In this document: piece by piece, positions 22,962 to 30,665 of the stretch
How the letters are laid out: each line of letters starts with the position of its first letter
Position numbering within the stretch: the first letter of the stretch is position 1
From: Vitrella brassicaformis CCMP3155
Lineage: Eukaryota; Protista; Chromerida
DNA: 64,000 bases
Direction: 5' to 3'
Assembly: GCA_001179505.1 (NCBI GenBank)
Contig: CDMY01000367.1
Location: 35,107-99,106 of the forward strand
The notes under the pieces: generated by a model
The model's database searches: none
Seen by the model: the letters and a program-made list of their open reading frames with translations, nothing else
Told to the model about the DNA's origin: nothing
Position numbers and translations under genes: made by a program

Positions 22962-25900
22962 TCACCACAGAAACAAAGATAGATAGACAGGGTGCGATGT
23001 GCATATGGACACCGAGCTACTGCTGCACAGTACAGTACATGAAGTTGCTGGCTGTGTGTCATTCGTCCTGCCGGCTAATGCCCGGCGGATGAACGACTTC
23101 ACCAAGGCCATATCAGATATGCCCATGAAGATGGCCTCCCTCGCCGCATCGATCAGTGCCGCCTCCAGTCTCCCCTTATCAGACCCATCGCTGTCTTGGG
23201 GCGGCTCCACCAGCAGTGACATGCTCATGCCTGATATCCCATACTGCACACACACGAATGGAATCCATGTGCCGCATTCTGTGTGCTGTGTGTTGTGTGT
23301 TGACTGACCTCTTTGATTTTGTCGATGACGTGCTGCAGTTTGCCGCCGTGCCGCTGCCTCTTGTCCTCGGCCATCATGCCCATCTCACGCTCAATGGCCG
23401 ACACCAGACGACCTGCGTCCCACGACTGGCCGGCAGCCAGGCCTTCTCCGTCCCCCCTCACACCATCCCCAGGTGGCCACTGGACGGCCCCCCGCCGCTT
23501 GAGTGACTGCAGGAAGCGCCGCAGCTGCGCTATGATGACGAGTGCGATGCCCTTGTGGAGGCCGAGGTCGCGGCCGATGTCCTCACACGCCGCCACACTG
23601 TCGATGTCATCCAAGATGTCCAACAAACTCACCGCCAAACCGATCTCCGTCTGACCCGACATGACAACACACCGACATGACAACACACACATTCATCCCG
23701 ACTTCACTCATGTGTGTTGCTCGTTGCTGACCATGATTCTGTCGGCTACGCGTTGCATGTCGGGTGACGGGTTGGCCTTGAGCAGCTCCACCAGCTGACC
23801 ATTCGTCAGCTCATCGAACGGAATCATCTCGCCCTCCCTCTCGCCATCCCCGTCGCCACGTCCACCGTCCCGCCCTTCGTGCGTCGGCCCATCCACCATG
23901 CGAAGGGCAGCGGCCGGATCTCGTGTGTGCGGGCCATTGGCTGGCGAGGGGGACTGCGTCTGCGGGACCACATCGGCCGCGTCTCGACTCATGGGCTGCG
24001 GACGGGGCGGTGGCCGCATCGTCAGGGCGATGTTGGGTGCCTCATCGCCAGCTGGAAGCTGCTCGTCGTCCGCCGCCTTGAGCTGCTTGGGCCTGGGTGG
24101 TGTGGCGTGCGCCTGACGGGGGTGCTGGCCGAGCTGTTTGATGAATCGGTTGGCGGCCTCCTTGACGCCCTCGCCGTCACGCTGCCCCACCATGGCCGGC
24201 AGCTTATGACGCACAAACGAGTCGACGGACGCAAAGCTCAGAGCTGGGACGGCCGCCAGCATCGCCCCAATGTTGTGACCCACTTGGCCGTACACGCGAC
24301 AGAGGACCATCCGCTGGGCGTGTGTCATGGGCTGCTGGTCCTCAGTGCCGTCGGTGTCCATCTCCCGCTGGCGGCATGCCCAAGCGGCATCGATGGCCGC
24401 CCCCATGGCCTCCCTGGTGGCCGCTGAGAGGGGCACCGACTGCACTGGGGTGCCGGGCAGGACCACCTCGACGGCCAGCTGTGTCAGCGCAGACCCACTC
24501 CTGAACCGCAGACAGAGGGGCATGTCGGGATGGGCTCGGCCGAGTGCCTCCAGCTGCTGGTAGAAGTGACGAATCAGGTCCCCCTGCTGGACCGGCGTCA
24601 CACGAGGGCCGCAACCGGCCGTGCGATTCGTCGGCGGTTCAGGCGGAGCGTCTTGCTGTAGCCGACTGGGAGTCTTGCTCTTGAGGATAGGATTGCGGTC
24701 GAGTCTTCCGTCTCTGCGGCGCCGTGGCTTGGTGTCACGGCGAGCAGTAGGGTCCAGAGGCACACCGGCTCTCACACCAGCCTGACGGAGCTGAGGCGCC
24801 TGTCGCTGTTTGCCAGGCAGAGGATCGTCGCCATCGTCGGCACTTCTTGCATCAGCCGGGTCGCCATCCAGCACCGCCGCACGCTCGGACGTGTGGGACT
24901 GCCTCTTCAAGATGGCCCGTAGGTGGCTGATGGCGGCGCCTTTGGCCTCTTCGTAGCCCAGCTGCTTGACGGAGAAGCTTTTGGTCTTCTCCTGACCGCT
25001 CGCCTTCCAGCGGGCTTCCCATGTGTTGTGTGTCTTGTCGAACCTCACGCGCTTGACGCCGCTCTGGTGCTCAGATCTCCGCTTCATTGCCGCCCGACCG
25101 GTGCGGTCCATCTCGAGACGATGCTCCTCGGCCAACGCCTGACGCACACGTGAGAAGAATAGAGGGTGAGATGGAGGCAGGGTGCTGCGATGCGATGTCG
25201 GTACCTTTGCTTTGTCGAATCCGTGGTGCTTGACATAGAAGGTCTTGCGCTTCTCCTTGCCGCTGCTCTTCTCGTACCACTGCGCTATCCACGCCTGGTC
25301 CCTCGCAGACCACGAGACGCCCGACACGTGCGACTGGTGTTCGGCAGCCTTTCGTGTGACGGCCTCGCCCTTATCCCTGGCTGTCGTGTTGGTCTGTGGC
25401 CTCGGCTGCCTCTCGATGGATGGTTTGCTGCTGCTGGCGAGAGCCGTATCTCTGCGGCGTTGCTTTCGAGAGGGGCTGTGGTCGGATGACTCGTCATGCA
25501 GCGAAGCCTCTGGCCCCACCGCACCCCCCCCCCCTGCTGCTGCCGGTCGAGCCATGAGAGGTCGATGACGCTCGCATGATCGCCGAGTTGGTCACGGTGG
25601 ATGGTGTTGCGGTACGCCACACACAGGCGAAGAGCCTCGAGGATGCTGTCACGGGAGTTGGGGTCGTCGATGACGAACTTGCGGAAGCCAAGGTACTTGC
25701 CCTGTTTGTAGAAGTAGGCACCGAAACGTCTCGGTGAAGCCATACAGACGCCCACCCTGACGGGACGCCAAAGATAGGATGCGAAGATATGTCGCTCCCC
25801 CTTGTCGTGTGTGTTGCTCACCCTCCATCGGCGGGCGGACAGGCGTCGTTGAACCGTCGTACCAGTCGGTCCACCAGGGCCGTGGCAAGGAAAGCCCCAG

Positions 25901-28900
25901 TCAGCCCATCCAGGTTGGGGTCGTCGCGGACTCTCTTGCGGCCGACGGCGTTCCGCTTGCCGGCGTGACGACATGCCGGGCCATCCCCCTCCTGAGCTCT
26001 CCCGCGACGCATGAGAGGGTCCGCCCTCTGTGCCCTTTTGCTGTGCCTGCATTCCGGGCAGAACCACTGGCCCTCCGGAACAGCCGTGAGGTTGATGCAG
26101 TAGGTGTGGTAGGCGGCAGAGCAACGCCGGTTGTCACACAGGAGGAGAAACTTCTCGTTGTCGCCCTTGCCGCACTTCCAGCACCGCACTGACTCATCCG
26201 AGCCACTCCTCGCCTCATCCATCTCGCCGCTCTGCGCCTTTGCCGCCTCACCGCCGCCCACGCCACTCAGGTCATTCCCCTCGAGCGGCTGTTTGTGGCA
26301 GTGACTGCTCCGTTTGGGGAGGGGGTGGGGCGGTGGGCGCGGGCGGCGGCTGTCATGGGACTCGCTCTCACGTCCGTCACCACAGAACGACGATGAAGAG
26401 CCCCGCCGCTCTGAGTCTGAGGATGAGGCCATGGCGGCGTCGCGGCTGGGCGGACTGGGTAGTGGCGTGCGGCTGCGATGTCCGACGGCAGGGTGGACGT
26501 CGCCATGAGAGGCTGCCGTTACCCCTGCATTGGCCCGTCGGTATGCTATGGCCGCACTCATCGCATCCTCGTAGCCGAGCTGCTTGACGGAGAAGGACTT
26601 GAAGTTCTTCTTGCCGCCGGTCCGCCAGTCGTCGGTCCACGCATTGCTTCTTTTGTGGTAGTAGACGCCCTTGACGCCGCTCTGGTGCTCAGATCGTTTC
26701 CTGACGGTCGCTCGTCCGATGCTCTCCATGTGCCTCCTGTCGATACTGGGGCTCGTGACGTCTGCCACATCACCACTGTGGCGCTCCACCGACGGGCCGT
26801 CGGTTGCCCTATTGCCGACGAGGCGGGTGAACAGGGGAAGGCTCTCGTCGTCGAATGACTCATCGCGATGGCCGTCGTATGGAGAATGACCCCTGGCAAC
26901 TCCCTTGCTTGGACGCTTCGAGACCGATATGCCGACGCTGCTGTCGCGCATGTGGGTATCGGAGCCCTGTGCTGTGTGGCGCGACGACTGAGGGCGACAG
27001 GCAGAGTGGACGGAGTGGACGCTTCCCTCAGATGTGTAGTGCCGCTGCAACATGGCACATCTGTGGTTGATAGCGGCATTCTTGGCGCCCTCATAGCCCA
27101 ACTCAGCCACTGAGAAGGACTTGCGCTGCTTCCTGCCGCCCACATGCCAACAGGCGATCCACAGGTTGGTCGCCTTGGCGTAGTGGACGCCTCGCACGCC
27201 GCTCTGATGCTTCGATCTCTTTTGCAACGACGCCTGGCCGGTGCGCTCCATCTCGAGACGATGCCGCTCGGCCAACGCCTGAAAGAAACAAGCAGAGCAA
27301 GAGAGGTTCTGGCTTGGGTGTGCTTCCTTCTTGCTTGTTGCACCTTTGCTTTGTCGTAGCCATGCTCCTTGACGTAGAACCGCTTGCGCTCCCTCTTGCC
27401 GCTGCTCTTCTCGGACCACTGCGCTTGCCACGCCTGATGCTGTTCAGACCATGAGACGCCCCTCACGGCTGACTGATGCTCGGCAGGCTTGCGGGCGGCG
27501 GTCTTGCTCTTGCTGGCCCTTGGCCTCGATCGGCCGTCGGGTGAGGTAACGTCGCCATATCCATCCATCTCACTATGACTCGACTCATCACCATCGTCGC
27601 CACTGGCACGAGCACTCGCCCGGCTGCCGACTGCGTGGTTGTGCAGCTCCTGTGGCTGTAGGCTGACCCGCTGGACGTAGATGGTCGCTGCAGTGTCGCC
27701 GTGGTGGGCATGGCGGATGATGTTGAGGTGGTGGGCCGCTTGCGCAAACGACTGAAAGATGCGCCGTGAAGACGTCACGTCAGACACCCGAAAGACACGC
27801 TCGTCGTGCATGGCCTCTCCGTCTGGTCGATAGGCCGCAAAGCTGGCCTCCTCGGCGCGCCACTCGAGACCAAAGCTGCATGGCACACACATCAACGAAA
27901 GGTCAATGGGTAGCCCATTCCACCAACCAGAGTGCATGCCTTGCGCCCACCTGGCGGTACCTTCCTGGTTTACGTCCACGAGCTGCCGCCTTGCCTGCTC
28001 CACCAGGCTGGCCGCCAGCGCATGGCCGCCCGCCTCACTCAGCTTCGCCGACAAACACCGCTCCTTCCCACCGCCCGACTCGTCGCGATGGCGCTTGGCC
28101 GCTGGTCGGTCGATGAGCATCTCGCTCTCAGAGCACGACGAGTCGGCTACTGGCCGCTCACTGACACGATGCGACGACCTGCCTCGGTGACGGCGCCGGG
28201 GCCGAATGTGGGGTGGCATGGGGACGTCGGTGCCCAGTGGACGGTCACTGGGACTCTGAGACACAGGCCGTAGCGGCATGGGTTTGCGCCTCGCTCTCCT
28301 GCTGCGGCGCATCTGAGGGCCAGCGGAGCCGTGGGAGCTGATGTCATCGAGCCAGCTGAGGTCCAGGGGGACGGCGGCCTCTCCCTCACTAGCCGTGCTC
28401 AGACGGTTGAGCTCCTCGACGGCTCGGCGAAAAGCGTCCATGACGGCCGAACGGGAGTCGAGGTCGACCACCGGCACATCGACAATGCGCTCAGTCGCAC
28501 CCTCCCCGACAGAGGACGGCACACGGACACGGAAGCTGCCCTTCTGCCAACACAACCCGCATGACCTGCCCGAAAGATCCGACCCCACACACACACCACA
28601 CACGTGACAAATCTGGCCCTTCCTGTCTTCCCTTGTCTTGTCTTACCCGTCGCTGCTGAGGACCTCAACGAGGGCAGCAGCCAGGTCGCCGCCCTCCATC
28701 CCACTTACACCTGGCCTGCTGCTGGGGGGGCCGTGGCGGGGCGCCGAGTGAATCGCATCATCATCTTTGGGGGGACTGCGGGAAAGGCTCTCATCTCTCG
28801 TCGCCCCTGCCTCTGAAGTATGGCGCCGCTGCTCCATCTCCCGTCTGTGTGCGATGGCCGCCTGTTTGGCCTCCTCGTAGCCCAGCTGCTTGACGGAGAA

Positions 28901-30665
28901 GTACTTGCTCTTCTTGCTGCGGCCCTCACGCCATTCGGCAGTCCAGTAGCCGCCGTACTTTTTGTCGTAGCTGACGCCCCGCACGCCGCTCTGGTGCTCC
29001 GACCGCTTTTTGACTACCGCCTGGCCGGTGCTCTCCATCTCGAGACGATGCTGCTCGGCCAACGCCTGGTGCACACGATACACACGAGGAGAGCTTGAGG
29101 ATGGCAGTTGGCGTCCCTGTTGTCAGTCAGTACCTTTGCTCTGTGGACGCCGTGCTCTTTGGCCGAGAAGTGCTTCCACTTGCGACCGCTCTTCTCGTAC
29201 CACCACACCTCCCAGACCTCATCCTTGGGACGCCAGCGGACGCCCCGCACATTCGACTGATACATGCCCTCGCTGGAGTTGGGCTGCTCATCCGCTGAGG
29301 GGCTCCTGCCGAGTGGATGTGTGAGGCGATGCTCCTGGGAAGGGCTGCGATCGACGGCCTCCTCGATGGCGGGGCCCGCCGGCTGCGCCACTTCCCCCAC
29401 CCTCGCAGTGGATCGTGGCTTGTGACCGTCACGAGGCTTCCTGCGTGCCTCCTTCTCGGCTGACACAACTATGAGAACAACACAGACAGCCACAGTCAGT
29501 GGATGGGCGCCGGTCGATTATTCGAGTGCGGCTCTTGTCGCATCCAACGTGCGTACTTTTGTCGTCGTGTGGTCCGTCGTGAGATGCATCAGCCGCCCCA
29601 CCAGCGACAGGGGGCGTGTGCGAGTGGTTGGCTGCATCGGCGGGCGGCGCTTCGTTGGCGCGGCCAGGGAAGCTGCTTTCCCCTGCACACACAACAGCAC
29701 GCACACAACGATCTGCATCATGCCCTCGAGTGTCTTCCTCCCTGCCCCGGTCTTACTTGCAGGTTTCCACTGTGTGACGATCCGCTCGACGCCATCAATG
29801 ACATCCGACACGCTCTCGAACCGATCGTCACTGTCTGCCGTGCCGTTGCGGACGGCCACCAGCAGGTCGCTCAGCATGCTCGTGTCCCAGCCCCTCACCA
29901 CATCGTCACGCTTCACAACCGCTCGCACCCACACCGGCGGCCGGTCGGTCCCTCCCCCCTCTCCCCATCATGCCGTCACCAAATACCGCTGGCCGTCGCC
30001 CTCGCCGGCCACACTGAAGTCCACACCTCATACTCAGCCGAGTACTTGCGGTGGCCGGGGATGCCCTTGTTGAGCAACACATCCGCCAAGGGGATCGGCC
30101 GGCGGCTTGACGTCCGCTCCCTGCTGTGGGAGGGCGCCGGAGGCCCCTCGCGCTCACGTGACCCGCCGACTGCTTTGCTCTTCGGATCGCGTGGCTCGTG
30201 ATGGTGATCGGCCGACGACATGTGCTGTTCTGCTGTGCTGGTGTTGCCATGCGGTGCCCCTGTGGGTGGGCCTGCGTGTGCTGGTGGCGGTGGGGGGGTC
30301 AGGCTGTGTCCCAGTGGGGAGGGGGAGGGGCTGGGTTGGGCGTCTGTCGTCTGCAAGGGTCGTCGGTCGCCCTGGACACTCGCTGTTCCACCACTCTGAC
30401 ACGGTCGACTTGCCGATGGATCAACAATGTCATGCGATTGGGAGCCGGTATCCGGCTGCTGTCCGAGGTCCCCTGACAGCAGATGAGAAGATACAGATCG
30501 ACAGCTGTCCTGGTGCACCTCTCCCGATACTGCGGCCGCGCCGGCAGCATGTGACGACGAGCCATGAGTCGCTGAGGCCGCCTGCGCGGCTGCCAGAGCC
30601 CGAGAGCCGTCCTCAGCCGCCGGTGGCGAGCCGCCGGCAGGAGCATGAGTAGGCTGACTGGCCAT
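22962..30665 (-). CDS. Multi-AP2 (ApiAP2-type) DNA-binding protein with 7 canonical AP2 domains, a PHD finger and two C-terminal SAM-like segments; the reading frame appears interrupted (possible pseudogene, split gene or assembly error)
   Basis: Seven (Y/H)QS.V.GV...W.A.W......K.F.VK.(H/L)G...A...A motifs (two end the first strand variant SGV/KRV) at ~29040-29260, 28835-29000, 27250-27480, 27050-27210, 26530-26690, 25110-25340 and 24910-25070. PHD CWKC...LLLCDNRRCSAAYHTYC...GQWFCPEC at 26049-26183. GT-AG introns link the long ORFs. Confidence 0.8.
26049..26183 (-). other. PHD finger (C4HC3) domain within the multi-AP2 gene
   Basis: CWKC-x9-LC-x4-C-x4-H-x2-C-x9-W-x-CPEC pattern, typical of PHD fingers. 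Confidence 0.92.

What the first reader, a model, noticed from the sequence alone, without database searches (positions are those of the whole stretch)
22962..30665. Giant 7xAP2 + PHD finger + two SAM-like domains in one gene model
Seen: seven canonical ApiAP2-type domains, a full C4HC3 PHD finger and GT-AG junctions joining the long ORFs. Knowledge: apicomplexan ApiAP2 factors usually have about 1-4 AP2 domains and seldom carry other recognisable domains, and PHD fingers read histone H3 tails. Inference: one polypeptide that combines sequence-specific DNA binding, histone reading and SAM-type oligomerisation would be an unusual Polycomb-like chromatin regulator built on AP2 domains in an apicomplexan relative.
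Basis: partly seen in the sequence, partly recalled or inferred. Interest (0 to 1): 0.8.

Follow-up and report, generated by a model that had tools for sequence, protein, structure and literature searches.

The report
Giant seven-AP2 plus PHD gene, Vitrella
This is a real but already annotated and unstudied gene of the alga Vitrella brassicaformis, one of a species-only family of giant proteins joining seven AP2 DNA-binding domains to one histone-reading PHD finger. The claimed SAM domains could not be confirmed, and this copy carries two frame-breaking lesions.

Summary
Observation confirmed except for SAM. On the minus strand of 22962-30665, Pfam finds seven AP2 domains (255 bits) and one C4HC3 PHD finger (31 bits; cut-off 24). 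All twelve annotated introns are GT-AG.

The organism is Vitrella brassicaformis CCMP3155. The locus is already one public gene model: CEM06613.1 / A0A0G4F439, 2058 aa, 13 exons.

It belongs to a Vitrella-only family of at least eight annotated long paralogs. At least three whole loci keep the same module order: N-module, AP2 pair, X, X, AP2 pair, solo AP2, PHD, X, AP2 pair, mid region, two C-terminal helical repeats. That collinearity, matching intron phases and three RNA-like contig junctions favour one gene. No transcript spanning it was seen.

The two "SAM-like" repeats got no support from Pfam, PDB sequences, profile comparison, two AlphaFold runs (pLDDT 42 and 49) or Foldseek. Only weak language-model leads point to SAM, so the Polycomb-like reading is unsupported.

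This copy has lesions that its paralogs lack. One is a 1-nt deletion plus a TGA in the N-module. The other is a frameshift at an 11-G run before AP2 no. 6. The annotation bypasses both with its two longest introns.

In a 1.84-billion-protein search, only Vitrella proteins among the best 150 combined AP2 and PHD. The scan has reported this family before on other DNA of this genome.

The parts
22962..30665 (-). The public CDS (CEM06613.1, P0012, 2058 aa) runs 30221 to 22965 plus the stop at 22964-22962.
   Evidence: Exact mapping of P0012 onto the window; accession and names; upstream ORF 30222-30665 is similar to paralog N-termini.
29758..30045 (-). N-terminal family module, damaged in this copy. 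Relative to the sister copy there is a 1-nt deletion at 30025 and TGG>TGA at 29970-29968. The annotation removes it with a 116-nt intron (30026-29911).
   Evidence: Nine of the ten closest paralog loci are open here and ours has stops. Differences from sister locus L036. An X6 contig identical to this copy leaves the genome at 30026.
29134..29268 (-). AP2 no. 1 (a-type). Its helix continues after the 68-nt intron 29133-29066.
   Evidence: Pfam 31.3 bits, positions 2-41/54 in the exon alone; coordinates; intron.
28820..29065 (-). Conserved linker plus AP2 no. 2 (b-type).
   Evidence: Pfam 54.7 bits, positions 1-53/54; coordinates.
28343..28564 (-). X1 module (ends with the D-L-S-W-L-D motif); family-specific, fold unknown.
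   Evidence: Alignment with paralog modules; hhalign against AP2 gives probability 0.1%, so AP2 kinship is not shown.
27650..27877 (-). X2 module (G-L-E-W-R type); family-specific, fold unknown.
27344..27490 (-). AP2 no. 3 (a-type), followed by the 65-nt intron 27343-27279.
   Evidence: Pfam 28.8 bits. X6 contigs end at 27280 and start at 27367, which fits this intron.
27039..27278 (-). Linker plus AP2 no. 4 (b-type).
   Evidence: Pfam, two AP2 stretches in this exon, 83.2 bits together; coordinates.
26523..26702 (-). AP2 no. 5 (solo b-type).
   Evidence: Pfam; coordinates.
26040..26195 (-). PHD finger, C4HC3, of the BAZ2 / KDM5-PHD1 / NSD / ATXR5 kind.
   Evidence: PF00628 31.5 bits. Best PDB sequence matches are NSD2 (2e-13), BAZ2B (1.8e-12), ATXR5 and KDM5A/B.
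25540..25755 (-). X3 module.
   Evidence: Preceded by the 65-nt phase-2 intron 25821-25757, in the same phase and matching position as the intron before X1.
25524..25534 (-). Run of 11 G (minus strand) where the reading frame shifts. The public model starts a 230-nt intron here (25524-25295) that deletes the first half of AP2 no. 6.
   Evidence: Sequence. Paralogs P0002 and the C348 locus read straight through. Logan contigs of runs X2 and X3 span it without a gap.
25205..25351 (-). AP2 no. 6 (a-type). Its N-terminal half (25295-25351) lies inside the annotated intron.
   Evidence: Pfam on ORF piece 23711-25555 gives two AP2 stretches, 71.2 bits.
25139..25204 (-). 66-nt in-frame GT-AG intron inside the third AP2 pair; the only intron seen directly as a joint.
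   Evidence: Run X6 contig skips exactly this stretch, ends CT..AC on the + strand.
24899..25138 (-). Linker plus AP2 no. 7 (b-type).
24095..24622 (-). Conserved 'mid' region of the family; no known domain.
   Evidence: 71% identity to P0010; no Pfam hit; landmark in paralogs.
23495..23827 (-). C-terminal helical repeat R1 (the better 'SAM-like' candidate), split by the 81-nt intron 23731-23651.
   Evidence: Alignment with the spliced paralogs P0010 and P0011. Atlas feature scores of 0.81-0.85 to three SAM-clan clusters, a lead only. No other support.
23073..23428 (-). C-terminal helical repeat R2, split by the 65-nt intron 23308-23244.
   Evidence: tblastn self-match between the first halves of R1 and R2. 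Short hhalign match to the helix 2-3 region of SAM, E 0.02, probability 2%.

Best explanation
The stretch is one multi-exon nuclear gene of Vitrella brassicaformis CCMP3155 (public model CEM06613.1 / A0A0G4F439). It belongs to a Vitrella-only, recently duplicating family of giant modular AP2 proteins. SHOWN: seven AP2 domains, arranged as three a/b pairs (each pair has a GT-AG intron inside the helix of the first domain, followed by a conserved linker of about 20 residues) plus one solo domain. SHOWN: one C4HC3 PHD finger, three family-specific X modules, a conserved mid region and two related C-terminal helical repeats. SHOWN: the same module order in at least three whole paralogous loci. INFERRED mechanism: a multivalent sequence-specific DNA binder. 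Each AP2 pair would read a composite site, much as plant double-AP2 proteins do. Several pairs would let it bind clustered motifs or bridge sites. The PHD finger, closest in sequence to PHD fingers that I recall as readers of the unmodified H3 tail (BAZ2A/B, KDM5 PHD1, ATXR5), would tie binding to nucleosomes lacking H3K4 methylation. That puts in one chain a partnership that Toxoplasma builds in trans, where PHD/PZP scaffolds dock AP2 factors to GCN5b. The C-terminal repeats are probably a protein-contact module; a SAM fold is possible but unproven. This copy has two frame-breaking lesions, so it may make a product lacking part of the N-module and half of AP2 no. 6, as annotated, or it may be decaying.
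For: - Pfam domains.
- Public single-gene model and its exact exon map. All 12 introns are GT-AG and ten of them are 65-97 nt.
- Intron phases fit, and homologous introns lie at homologous places.
- Splice sites agree with the spliced paralog proteins P0002, P0010 and P0011.
- RNA-like run X6 shows the joint 25204-25139 and contig breaks at 30026 and 27280, all at annotated junctions.
- Family: C-terminal module at 10 or more loci, PHD module at 7 or more, N-module at 10 or more.
- Long paralogs are annotated as single genes with 5-7 AP2 with or without PHD.
- Whole-length collinearity at C348 and C269.
- dN/dS about 0.5 against two paralogs.
- PHD similarity to BAZ2B, NSD2/3, ATXR5 and KDM5A/B.
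- Trans AP2-PZP/PHD partnership in Toxoplasma: PMC13601556.
Against: - No contig or read spans more than one junction, so a single transcript is not shown. X6 is only inferred to be RNA.
- The two introns that rescue the frame are the longest (116 and 230 nt) and remove sequence that is coding in paralogs. They look like annotation work-arounds.
- Annotators split the collinear C269 locus into several genes, P0002 and P0011.
- dN/dS of 0.5 is only moderate constraint.
- DNA binding, histone binding and oligomerisation are all untested. The dimer prediction gave no verdict.
Confidence: 0.7

Rival explanations
1. This copy is a decaying paralog (an expressed pseudogene or a truncated gene). The family design is real, but here translation stops early and the 7xAP2 + PHD giant is not made from this locus.
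For: - The N-module has a 1-nt deletion and a TGA that the 94%-identical sister copy lacks, while nine of the ten closest paralog loci are open.
- The frame shifts at the 11-G run, where paralogs read through.
- Logan contigs of two runs reproduce the 11 G.
- The two rescuing introns are length outliers.
- The C-terminal tail also differs in frame from most paralogs.
Against: - An RNA-like contig identical to this copy leaves the genome at the annotated donor, 30026. This suggests the lesion is spliced out.
- Everything downstream of both lesions remains open and similar to paralogs, with dN/dS about 0.5 and not 1.
- The G-run length could still be a sequencing error, because the runs may be the assembly's own data.
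Confidence: 0.25
2. The stretch holds two or more separate genes, for example a 5' gene with five AP2 domains plus the PHD finger ending after the frameshift, and a 3' gene starting at the ATG at 25555 with two AP2 domains, the mid region and the C-terminal repeats.
For: - An ATG at 25555 opens the 615-aa ORF just upstream of the frameshift.
- Annotators split the collinear C269 locus this way, into P0002 and P0011.
- No spanning transcript was seen.
Against: - In the paralogs P0002 and C348 the X3 module runs into AP2 no. 6 in one open frame.
- Module order and spacing are kept on one strand at several loci.
- P0173 and P0175 are modelled whole.
- Intron phases match across every junction.
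Confidence: 0.08
3. The family is the cargo of a mobile element and not a host regulator, with the AP2 domains serving element-specific DNA recognition.
For: - Ten or more copies, some near-identical in parts.
- dS between copies is mosaic.
- A related Vitrella AP2 protein, P0018, is named as having a CENPB-type HTH domain.
- AP2 domains occur in bacterial and phage endonucleases and integrases (general knowledge).
Against: - Pfam finds no transposase, integrase, reverse transcriptase or endonuclease domain in P0012, P0173, P0174, P0175 or P0176.
- Intron positions are conserved between copies.
- Copies cluster on a few contigs, as segmental duplicates do.
Confidence: 0.03

Closest known systems
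ApiAP2 transcription factors of Apicomplexa (review PMC6631176)
   Same: AP2 domains of about 60 aa as the DNA-binding unit; large proteins with little else recognisable; tandem AP2 arrangements; expansion by duplication, already noted for chromerids (PMC4501334).
   Different: Described ApiAP2s carry one to four AP2 domains, with AT-hook, zinc-finger, acetyltransferase-like, pentapeptide or ACDC extras. This gene has seven AP2 domains plus a PHD finger. No orthologue exists: the nearest non-Vitrella hits (Piridium, Cardiosporidium AP2VIII-7, Chromera Cvel_8538) match only single AP2 domains.
Vitrella paralogs CEM-series P0173 (2187 aa), P0175 (2226 aa), P0174 (sister copy, 2296 aa)
   Same: Same module grammar and intron positions. 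P0173 aligns over 95% of the length at 54% identity.
   Different: This copy has the solo AP2 no. 5, the N-module lesions and the G-run frameshift. The sister copy P0174 has no PHD finger.
PHD fingers of BAZ2A/B, KDM5A/B PHD1, ATXR5, NSD2/3
   Same: Best PDB sequence matches, E 2e-13 to 1e-9, including the shared 'K-G-D-N-E..L-L-L-C-D' stretch with BAZ2B. I recall several of these as readers of the unmodified H3K4 tail; this was not checked in a paper here.
   Different: Here the finger sits alone between AP2 arrays. It has no bromodomain, SET or JmjC partner domain. Ligand untested.
Toxoplasma GCN5b complexes in which PHD/PZP scaffolds dock AP2 heterodimers (PMC13601556)
   Same: The same two functions, an AP2 DNA binder and a PHD-type histone reader, work together in a close relative.
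   Different: There they are separate proteins. Here they are fused in one chain. No homology beyond the domains was shown, and no GCN5 link was tested.
Plant AP2/ANT-type double-AP2 proteins (general knowledge)
   Same: Two AP2 domains joined by a conserved short linker, acting as one unit.
   Different: Independent origin is likely. Here the pair is repeated three times in one protein and split by an intron in the first domain's helix.
SAM-domain polymerising chromatin proteins (Polycomb Ph/Scm type)
   Same: Only the size and the helical character of the two C-terminal repeats, plus weak language-model leads.
   Different: No SAM match by Pfam, PDB sequence, profile or fold. No other Polycomb feature is present.

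Membership tests
AP2/ERF domain (PF00847), ApiAP2-type factor | Match to the AP2 profile above the curated cut-off (33.3 bits) | tested here: met
   255.4 bits and seven stretches on P0012. Exon by exon: 54.7, 83.2 and 71.2 bits, plus two a-type halves at 31.3 and 28.8 bits.
AP2/ERF domain (PF00847), ApiAP2-type factor | Complete three-strand plus helix domain | tested here: met
   b-type domains cover profile positions 1-53/54. a-type domains are complete only after splicing, as in P0002 (2-53/54). AP2 no. 6 loses its first half in the public model.
AP2/ERF domain (PF00847), ApiAP2-type factor | Sequence-specific DNA binding | not testable with these tools
   Needs a protein-binding microarray or EMSA.
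AP2/ERF domain (PF00847), ApiAP2-type factor | Orthology to a named apicomplexan ApiAP2 | tested here: not met
   In the 1.84-billion-protein search all strong hits are Vitrella. Non-Vitrella hits match one AP2 domain only.
PHD finger (PF00628) | C4HC3 zinc-ligand pattern with PHD spacing | tested here: met
   Pattern found once, residues 1155-1199 of P0012; window 26040-26195.
PHD finger (PF00628) | Profile match above the cut-off (24 bits) | tested here: met
   31.5 and 30.7 bits; 105 PDB PHD sequences at E<=0.01.
PHD finger (PF00628) | Binding of a histone H3 tail | not testable with these tools
   Only inferred, from similarity to BAZ2B, KDM5 PHD1 and ATXR5.
SAM domain (PF00536 / PF07647) | Profile match | tested here: not met
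   No SAM family at E<=10 on the exons or on the spliced paralogs, nor at E<=1 on P0012. PF00536 on the whole genome at E<=1 misses the locus. hhalign against three Vitrella SAM_1 domains gives probability 0.6% and 2.2%.
SAM domain (PF00536 / PF07647) | Five-helix bundle fold | tested here: inconclusive
   AlphaFold models are helical, with five helices per repeat in the first run, but pLDDT is 42.2 and 48.7. Foldseek against the PDB finds nothing below E 1. Atlas feature scores are 0.81-0.85 to SAM_TNK, SAM_1/2 and SAM_NCD1 clusters, under the 0.9 line.
SAM domain (PF00536 / PF07647) | Self-association | tested here: inconclusive
   The two-copy complex prediction gave 'no answer'.
Polycomb-like chromatin regulator | Polymerising SAM, or other Polycomb signature domains (chromodomain, MBT, PCL-type Tudor with two PHD fingers) | tested here: not met
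   Pfam on P0012 finds only AP2 and one PHD finger.

The most novel reading that the evidence does not exclude
The AP2-PHD fusion could be a 'Rosetta stone': a free-living relative carries in one chain the AP2 factor and PHD reader partnership that apicomplexan parasites assemble in trans on GCN5b. The C-terminal repeats would be divergent SAM-type polymerising domains. The protein would then nucleate sequence-targeted, self-spreading chromatin domains, a Polycomb-like logic built on AP2 domains.
Probability: 0.12. Interest if true: 0.7.

Novelty: new variant of a known kind. Interest (0 to 1): 0.4.

Why it matters
ApiAP2 factors are the main gene regulators of malaria and Toxoplasma parasites, and how they connect to chromatin is an open question. 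A photosynthetic relative that fuses arrays of AP2 domains to a histone-reading PHD finger gives a natural example of that connection written into one protein. It also widens the known range of the family (seven domains against one to four) and offers PHD-plus and PHD-minus sister genes for comparison. The value is limited for four reasons. The gene is already in public databases. The family is confined to one species. This copy may be damaged. Nothing about its function has been tested.

Tried and rejected
- SAM reading. Pfam was run at E<=10 on exons and spliced paralogs, and a PDB profile search was run. PF00536 was run on the whole genome, and hhalign against three real Vitrella SAM domains. 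Two AlphaFold jobs used 2 and 16 alignment rows, followed by Foldseek against the PDB. None supports SAM. The models are too poor for fold searches to mean anything.
- Self-association of the C-terminal repeats. Complex prediction with two copies gave 'no answer', which is neither for nor against.
- X modules as degenerate AP2 domains. hhalign probability 0.1%; not shown.
- R1 against R2 by hhalign. Weak (E 0.03). Their kinship rests on a tblastn self-hit and the shared intron position.
- An intact allele of the N-module. The variant letters in the laid contigs restore the frame, but they are exactly the sister copy 56 kb away. They are not an allele.
- A different intron that would keep AP2 no. 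6 whole. 132 GT/GC..AG pairs fit formally, so sequence alone cannot decide.
- The look-up of encoding contigs for the paralogs returned nothing, because records of the window's own genome are left out.
- Papers on ApiAP2 with a PHD finger: no description of such a fusion was found.
- Joined models. Whole-protein scans used the public protein P0012.


Full report
**What is there.** The window is GC-rich, 56-64% around the locus. The long open frames of 22962-30665 lie on the minus strand.

Scanned exon by exon, Pfam finds AP2 (PF00847) in five ORF pieces, seven domains in all. It also finds one PHD finger (PF00628, 31.5 bits, cut-off 24).

The AP2 domains form three pairs plus one solo domain. 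In each pair the first ('a') domain is cut by a short GT-AG intron inside its C-terminal helix. In the exon alone it matches only profile positions 2-41 of 54. The next exon supplies the rest of the helix, a conserved linker of about 20 residues and the second ('b') domain. In the spliced paralog protein P0002 the a-type domains become complete, 2-53 of 54. This is good internal evidence for those introns.

**Organism and public record.** Word-based and exhaustive protein searches show the organism is Vitrella brassicaformis CCMP3155. The locus is already one public gene model: P0012 = CEM06613.1 = UniProt A0A0G4F439, 'PHD-type domain-containing protein', 2058 aa.
- Exact mapping gives 13 exons between 30221 and 22965.
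- All 12 introns are GT-AG. Ten are 65-97 nt; the other two are 116 and 230 nt.
- Pfam on P0012 gives seven AP2 stretches (255 bits) and the PHD finger.
That extra stretch resembles the annotated N-termini of paralogs (E 1e-11 to P0013, 7e-56 to P0174). The longer start is therefore plausible.

**One gene or several.** Direct transcript evidence is thin.
- Three of the four runs laid (X1-X3) behave as genomic DNA.
- Run X6 behaves like RNA. One contig skips exactly 25139-25204 with GT..AG ends on the minus strand. Other contigs, identical to this copy, stop at 30026 and at 27280, which are annotated junctions.
- No record spans more than one junction, so a single transcript is not shown.

The stronger argument is comparative.
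- The C-terminal module occurs at 10 or more loci of this genome.
- The PHD module occurs at 7 or more loci.
- The N-module occurs at 10 or more loci.
- At several loci these modules lie on one strand, in the same order and at similar spacing.
- P0012 aligns collinearly along whole loci on contigs C348 and C269.
- Long paralogs are modelled as single genes: P0173 (2187 aa, 6 AP2 + PHD, 95% coverage) and P0175 (2226 aa, 7 AP2 + PHD).
- Others carry AP2 only: P0174 (2296 aa, 5 AP2) and P0176 (1849 aa, 6 AP2).
- Homologous introns sit at homologous places in the same phase.

Against this, annotators split the C269 locus into P0002 and P0011.

**Lesions in this copy.** There are two places where paralogs have an open frame and this copy does not.
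- *N-module.* Nine of the ten closest paralog loci are open; ours has stops. Against the sister copy 56 kb away on the same contig (94% identical here), ours lacks one base at 30025 and has TGA for TGG at 29970-29968. The public model removes the segment with a 116-nt intron.
- *G-run.* At the run of 11 G (25524-25534) the frame shifts. Paralogs P0002 and the C348 locus read straight from module X3 into AP2 no. 6. The public model starts a 230-nt intron in the G-run, which deletes the first half of AP2 no. 6.

These two rescuing introns are the two longest of the gene. Logan contigs of runs X2 and X3 reproduce the 11 G, but those runs may be the assembly's own data. dN/dS against two paralogs is about 0.5. 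Synonymous divergence is mosaic, from 0.05 to 1.4 between exons, which suggests exchange between copies.

**The PHD finger.** It has the full C4HC3 pattern. Its best solved relatives by sequence are NSD2 (2e-13) and BAZ2B (1.8e-12, sharing the acidic 'GDNE' stretch before the 'LLLCD' motif). ATXR5, NSD3 and KDM5A/B PHD1 follow. From memory, several of these read the unmodified H3K4 tail. That class assignment is an inference.

**The 'SAM-like' domains.** These are two related C-terminal repeats, R1 (23495-23827) and R2 (23073-23428). Each is split by an intron at the matching place, and both are well conserved among paralogs. Nothing identifies them as SAM:
- no Pfam hit at E<=10;
- no hit when PF00536 is run on the whole genome;
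- no PDB sequence match;
- hhalign probability below 3% against three real Vitrella SAM_1 domains;
- AlphaFold pLDDT of 42 and 49, and nothing from Foldseek;
- a dimer prediction without verdict.

Only the language-model atlas places three SAM-clan clusters among the nearest named sets, at 0.81-0.85, under the tool's own line for more than a lead. I put a SAM fold at roughly 40% for R1 and 25% for R2. The 'Polycomb-like' label has no support.

**Other modules.** The three X modules and the mid region have no known family. A test of X against AP2 was negative.

**Comparison with what is known.**
- The ApiAP2 review gives one to four AP2 domains per protein, with AT-hook, zinc-finger, acetyltransferase-like, pentapeptide and ACDC extras (PMC6631176). 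No PHD finger is listed.
- The chromerid genome paper reports many apiAP2 genes in paralogous clusters but does not discuss this design (PMC4501334).
- In Toxoplasma, PHD and PZP scaffolds dock AP2 heterodimers to GCN5b as separate proteins (PMC13601556). Here the two functions are fused.
- Among the best 150 of 2883 hits in 1.84 billion representative proteins, only three carry both AP2 and PHD, and all three are Vitrella. Weaker combinations below rank 150 were not examined.
- The nearest AP2 hits outside Vitrella (Piridium, Cardiosporidium, Chromera) match single domains only.

**Earlier notes of this scan.** Three notes describe other members of this family on other DNA of the same genome (s1-197157, s1-246546, s1-235869). 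They agree on three points: the genes are annotated but unstudied, the family is species-only, and the SAM claim is mostly unconfirmed. I tested the family claims on my own locus only.

**Verdict.** This is a real gene with an unusual, undescribed domain design, best filed as a new variant of the ApiAP2 kind. It is already present in public annotation and is one of many paralogs. Its SAM/Polycomb reading is unsupported, and its integrity in this copy is open.

Noticed in passing
G000:C367:2500-9800 (locus L038), about 56 kb before this gene on the same contig, outside the window: A sister copy of the gene (P0174, 2296 aa, 5 AP2, no PHD finger). It is 94% identical in the N-module, where it is intact. 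Its letters explain all the 'variant' contigs laid on 29937-30208.
   Followed up: partly
window 22965-30221 compared with L038 and L039: Synonymous divergence between paralogs is mosaic, exon by exon (dS 0.05 to 1.4 against the sister; different exons are closest to different paralogs). This looks like gene conversion or exon shuffling within the family.
   Followed up: partly
   Followed up: no
window 23656-23688: A perfect 16-nt unit repeated 2.1 times inside intron 11 (23651-23731).
   Followed up: no
P0018 (CEM21216.1, 730 aa, elsewhere in the genome): A Vitrella protein with three AP2 domains of this subfamily is named by UniProt as having a CENPB-type HTH domain, a domain often derived from pogo-type transposases.
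   Followed up: no
G000:C961 (7.9-kb contig), protein P0001: A fragmentary family member. Its public model translates an AP2 linker out of frame and switches frame after the X3 module, so either the copy or its model is broken. RNA-like run X6 carries its letters at the place matching window 25529.
   Followed up: partly
window 27217 joined to 29019: Contigs of runs X1-X3 join these two places with 14 foreign letters between them. This is most likely the assembly graph jumping between the repeated AP2 pairs or a paralog, not a deletion.
   Followed up: no
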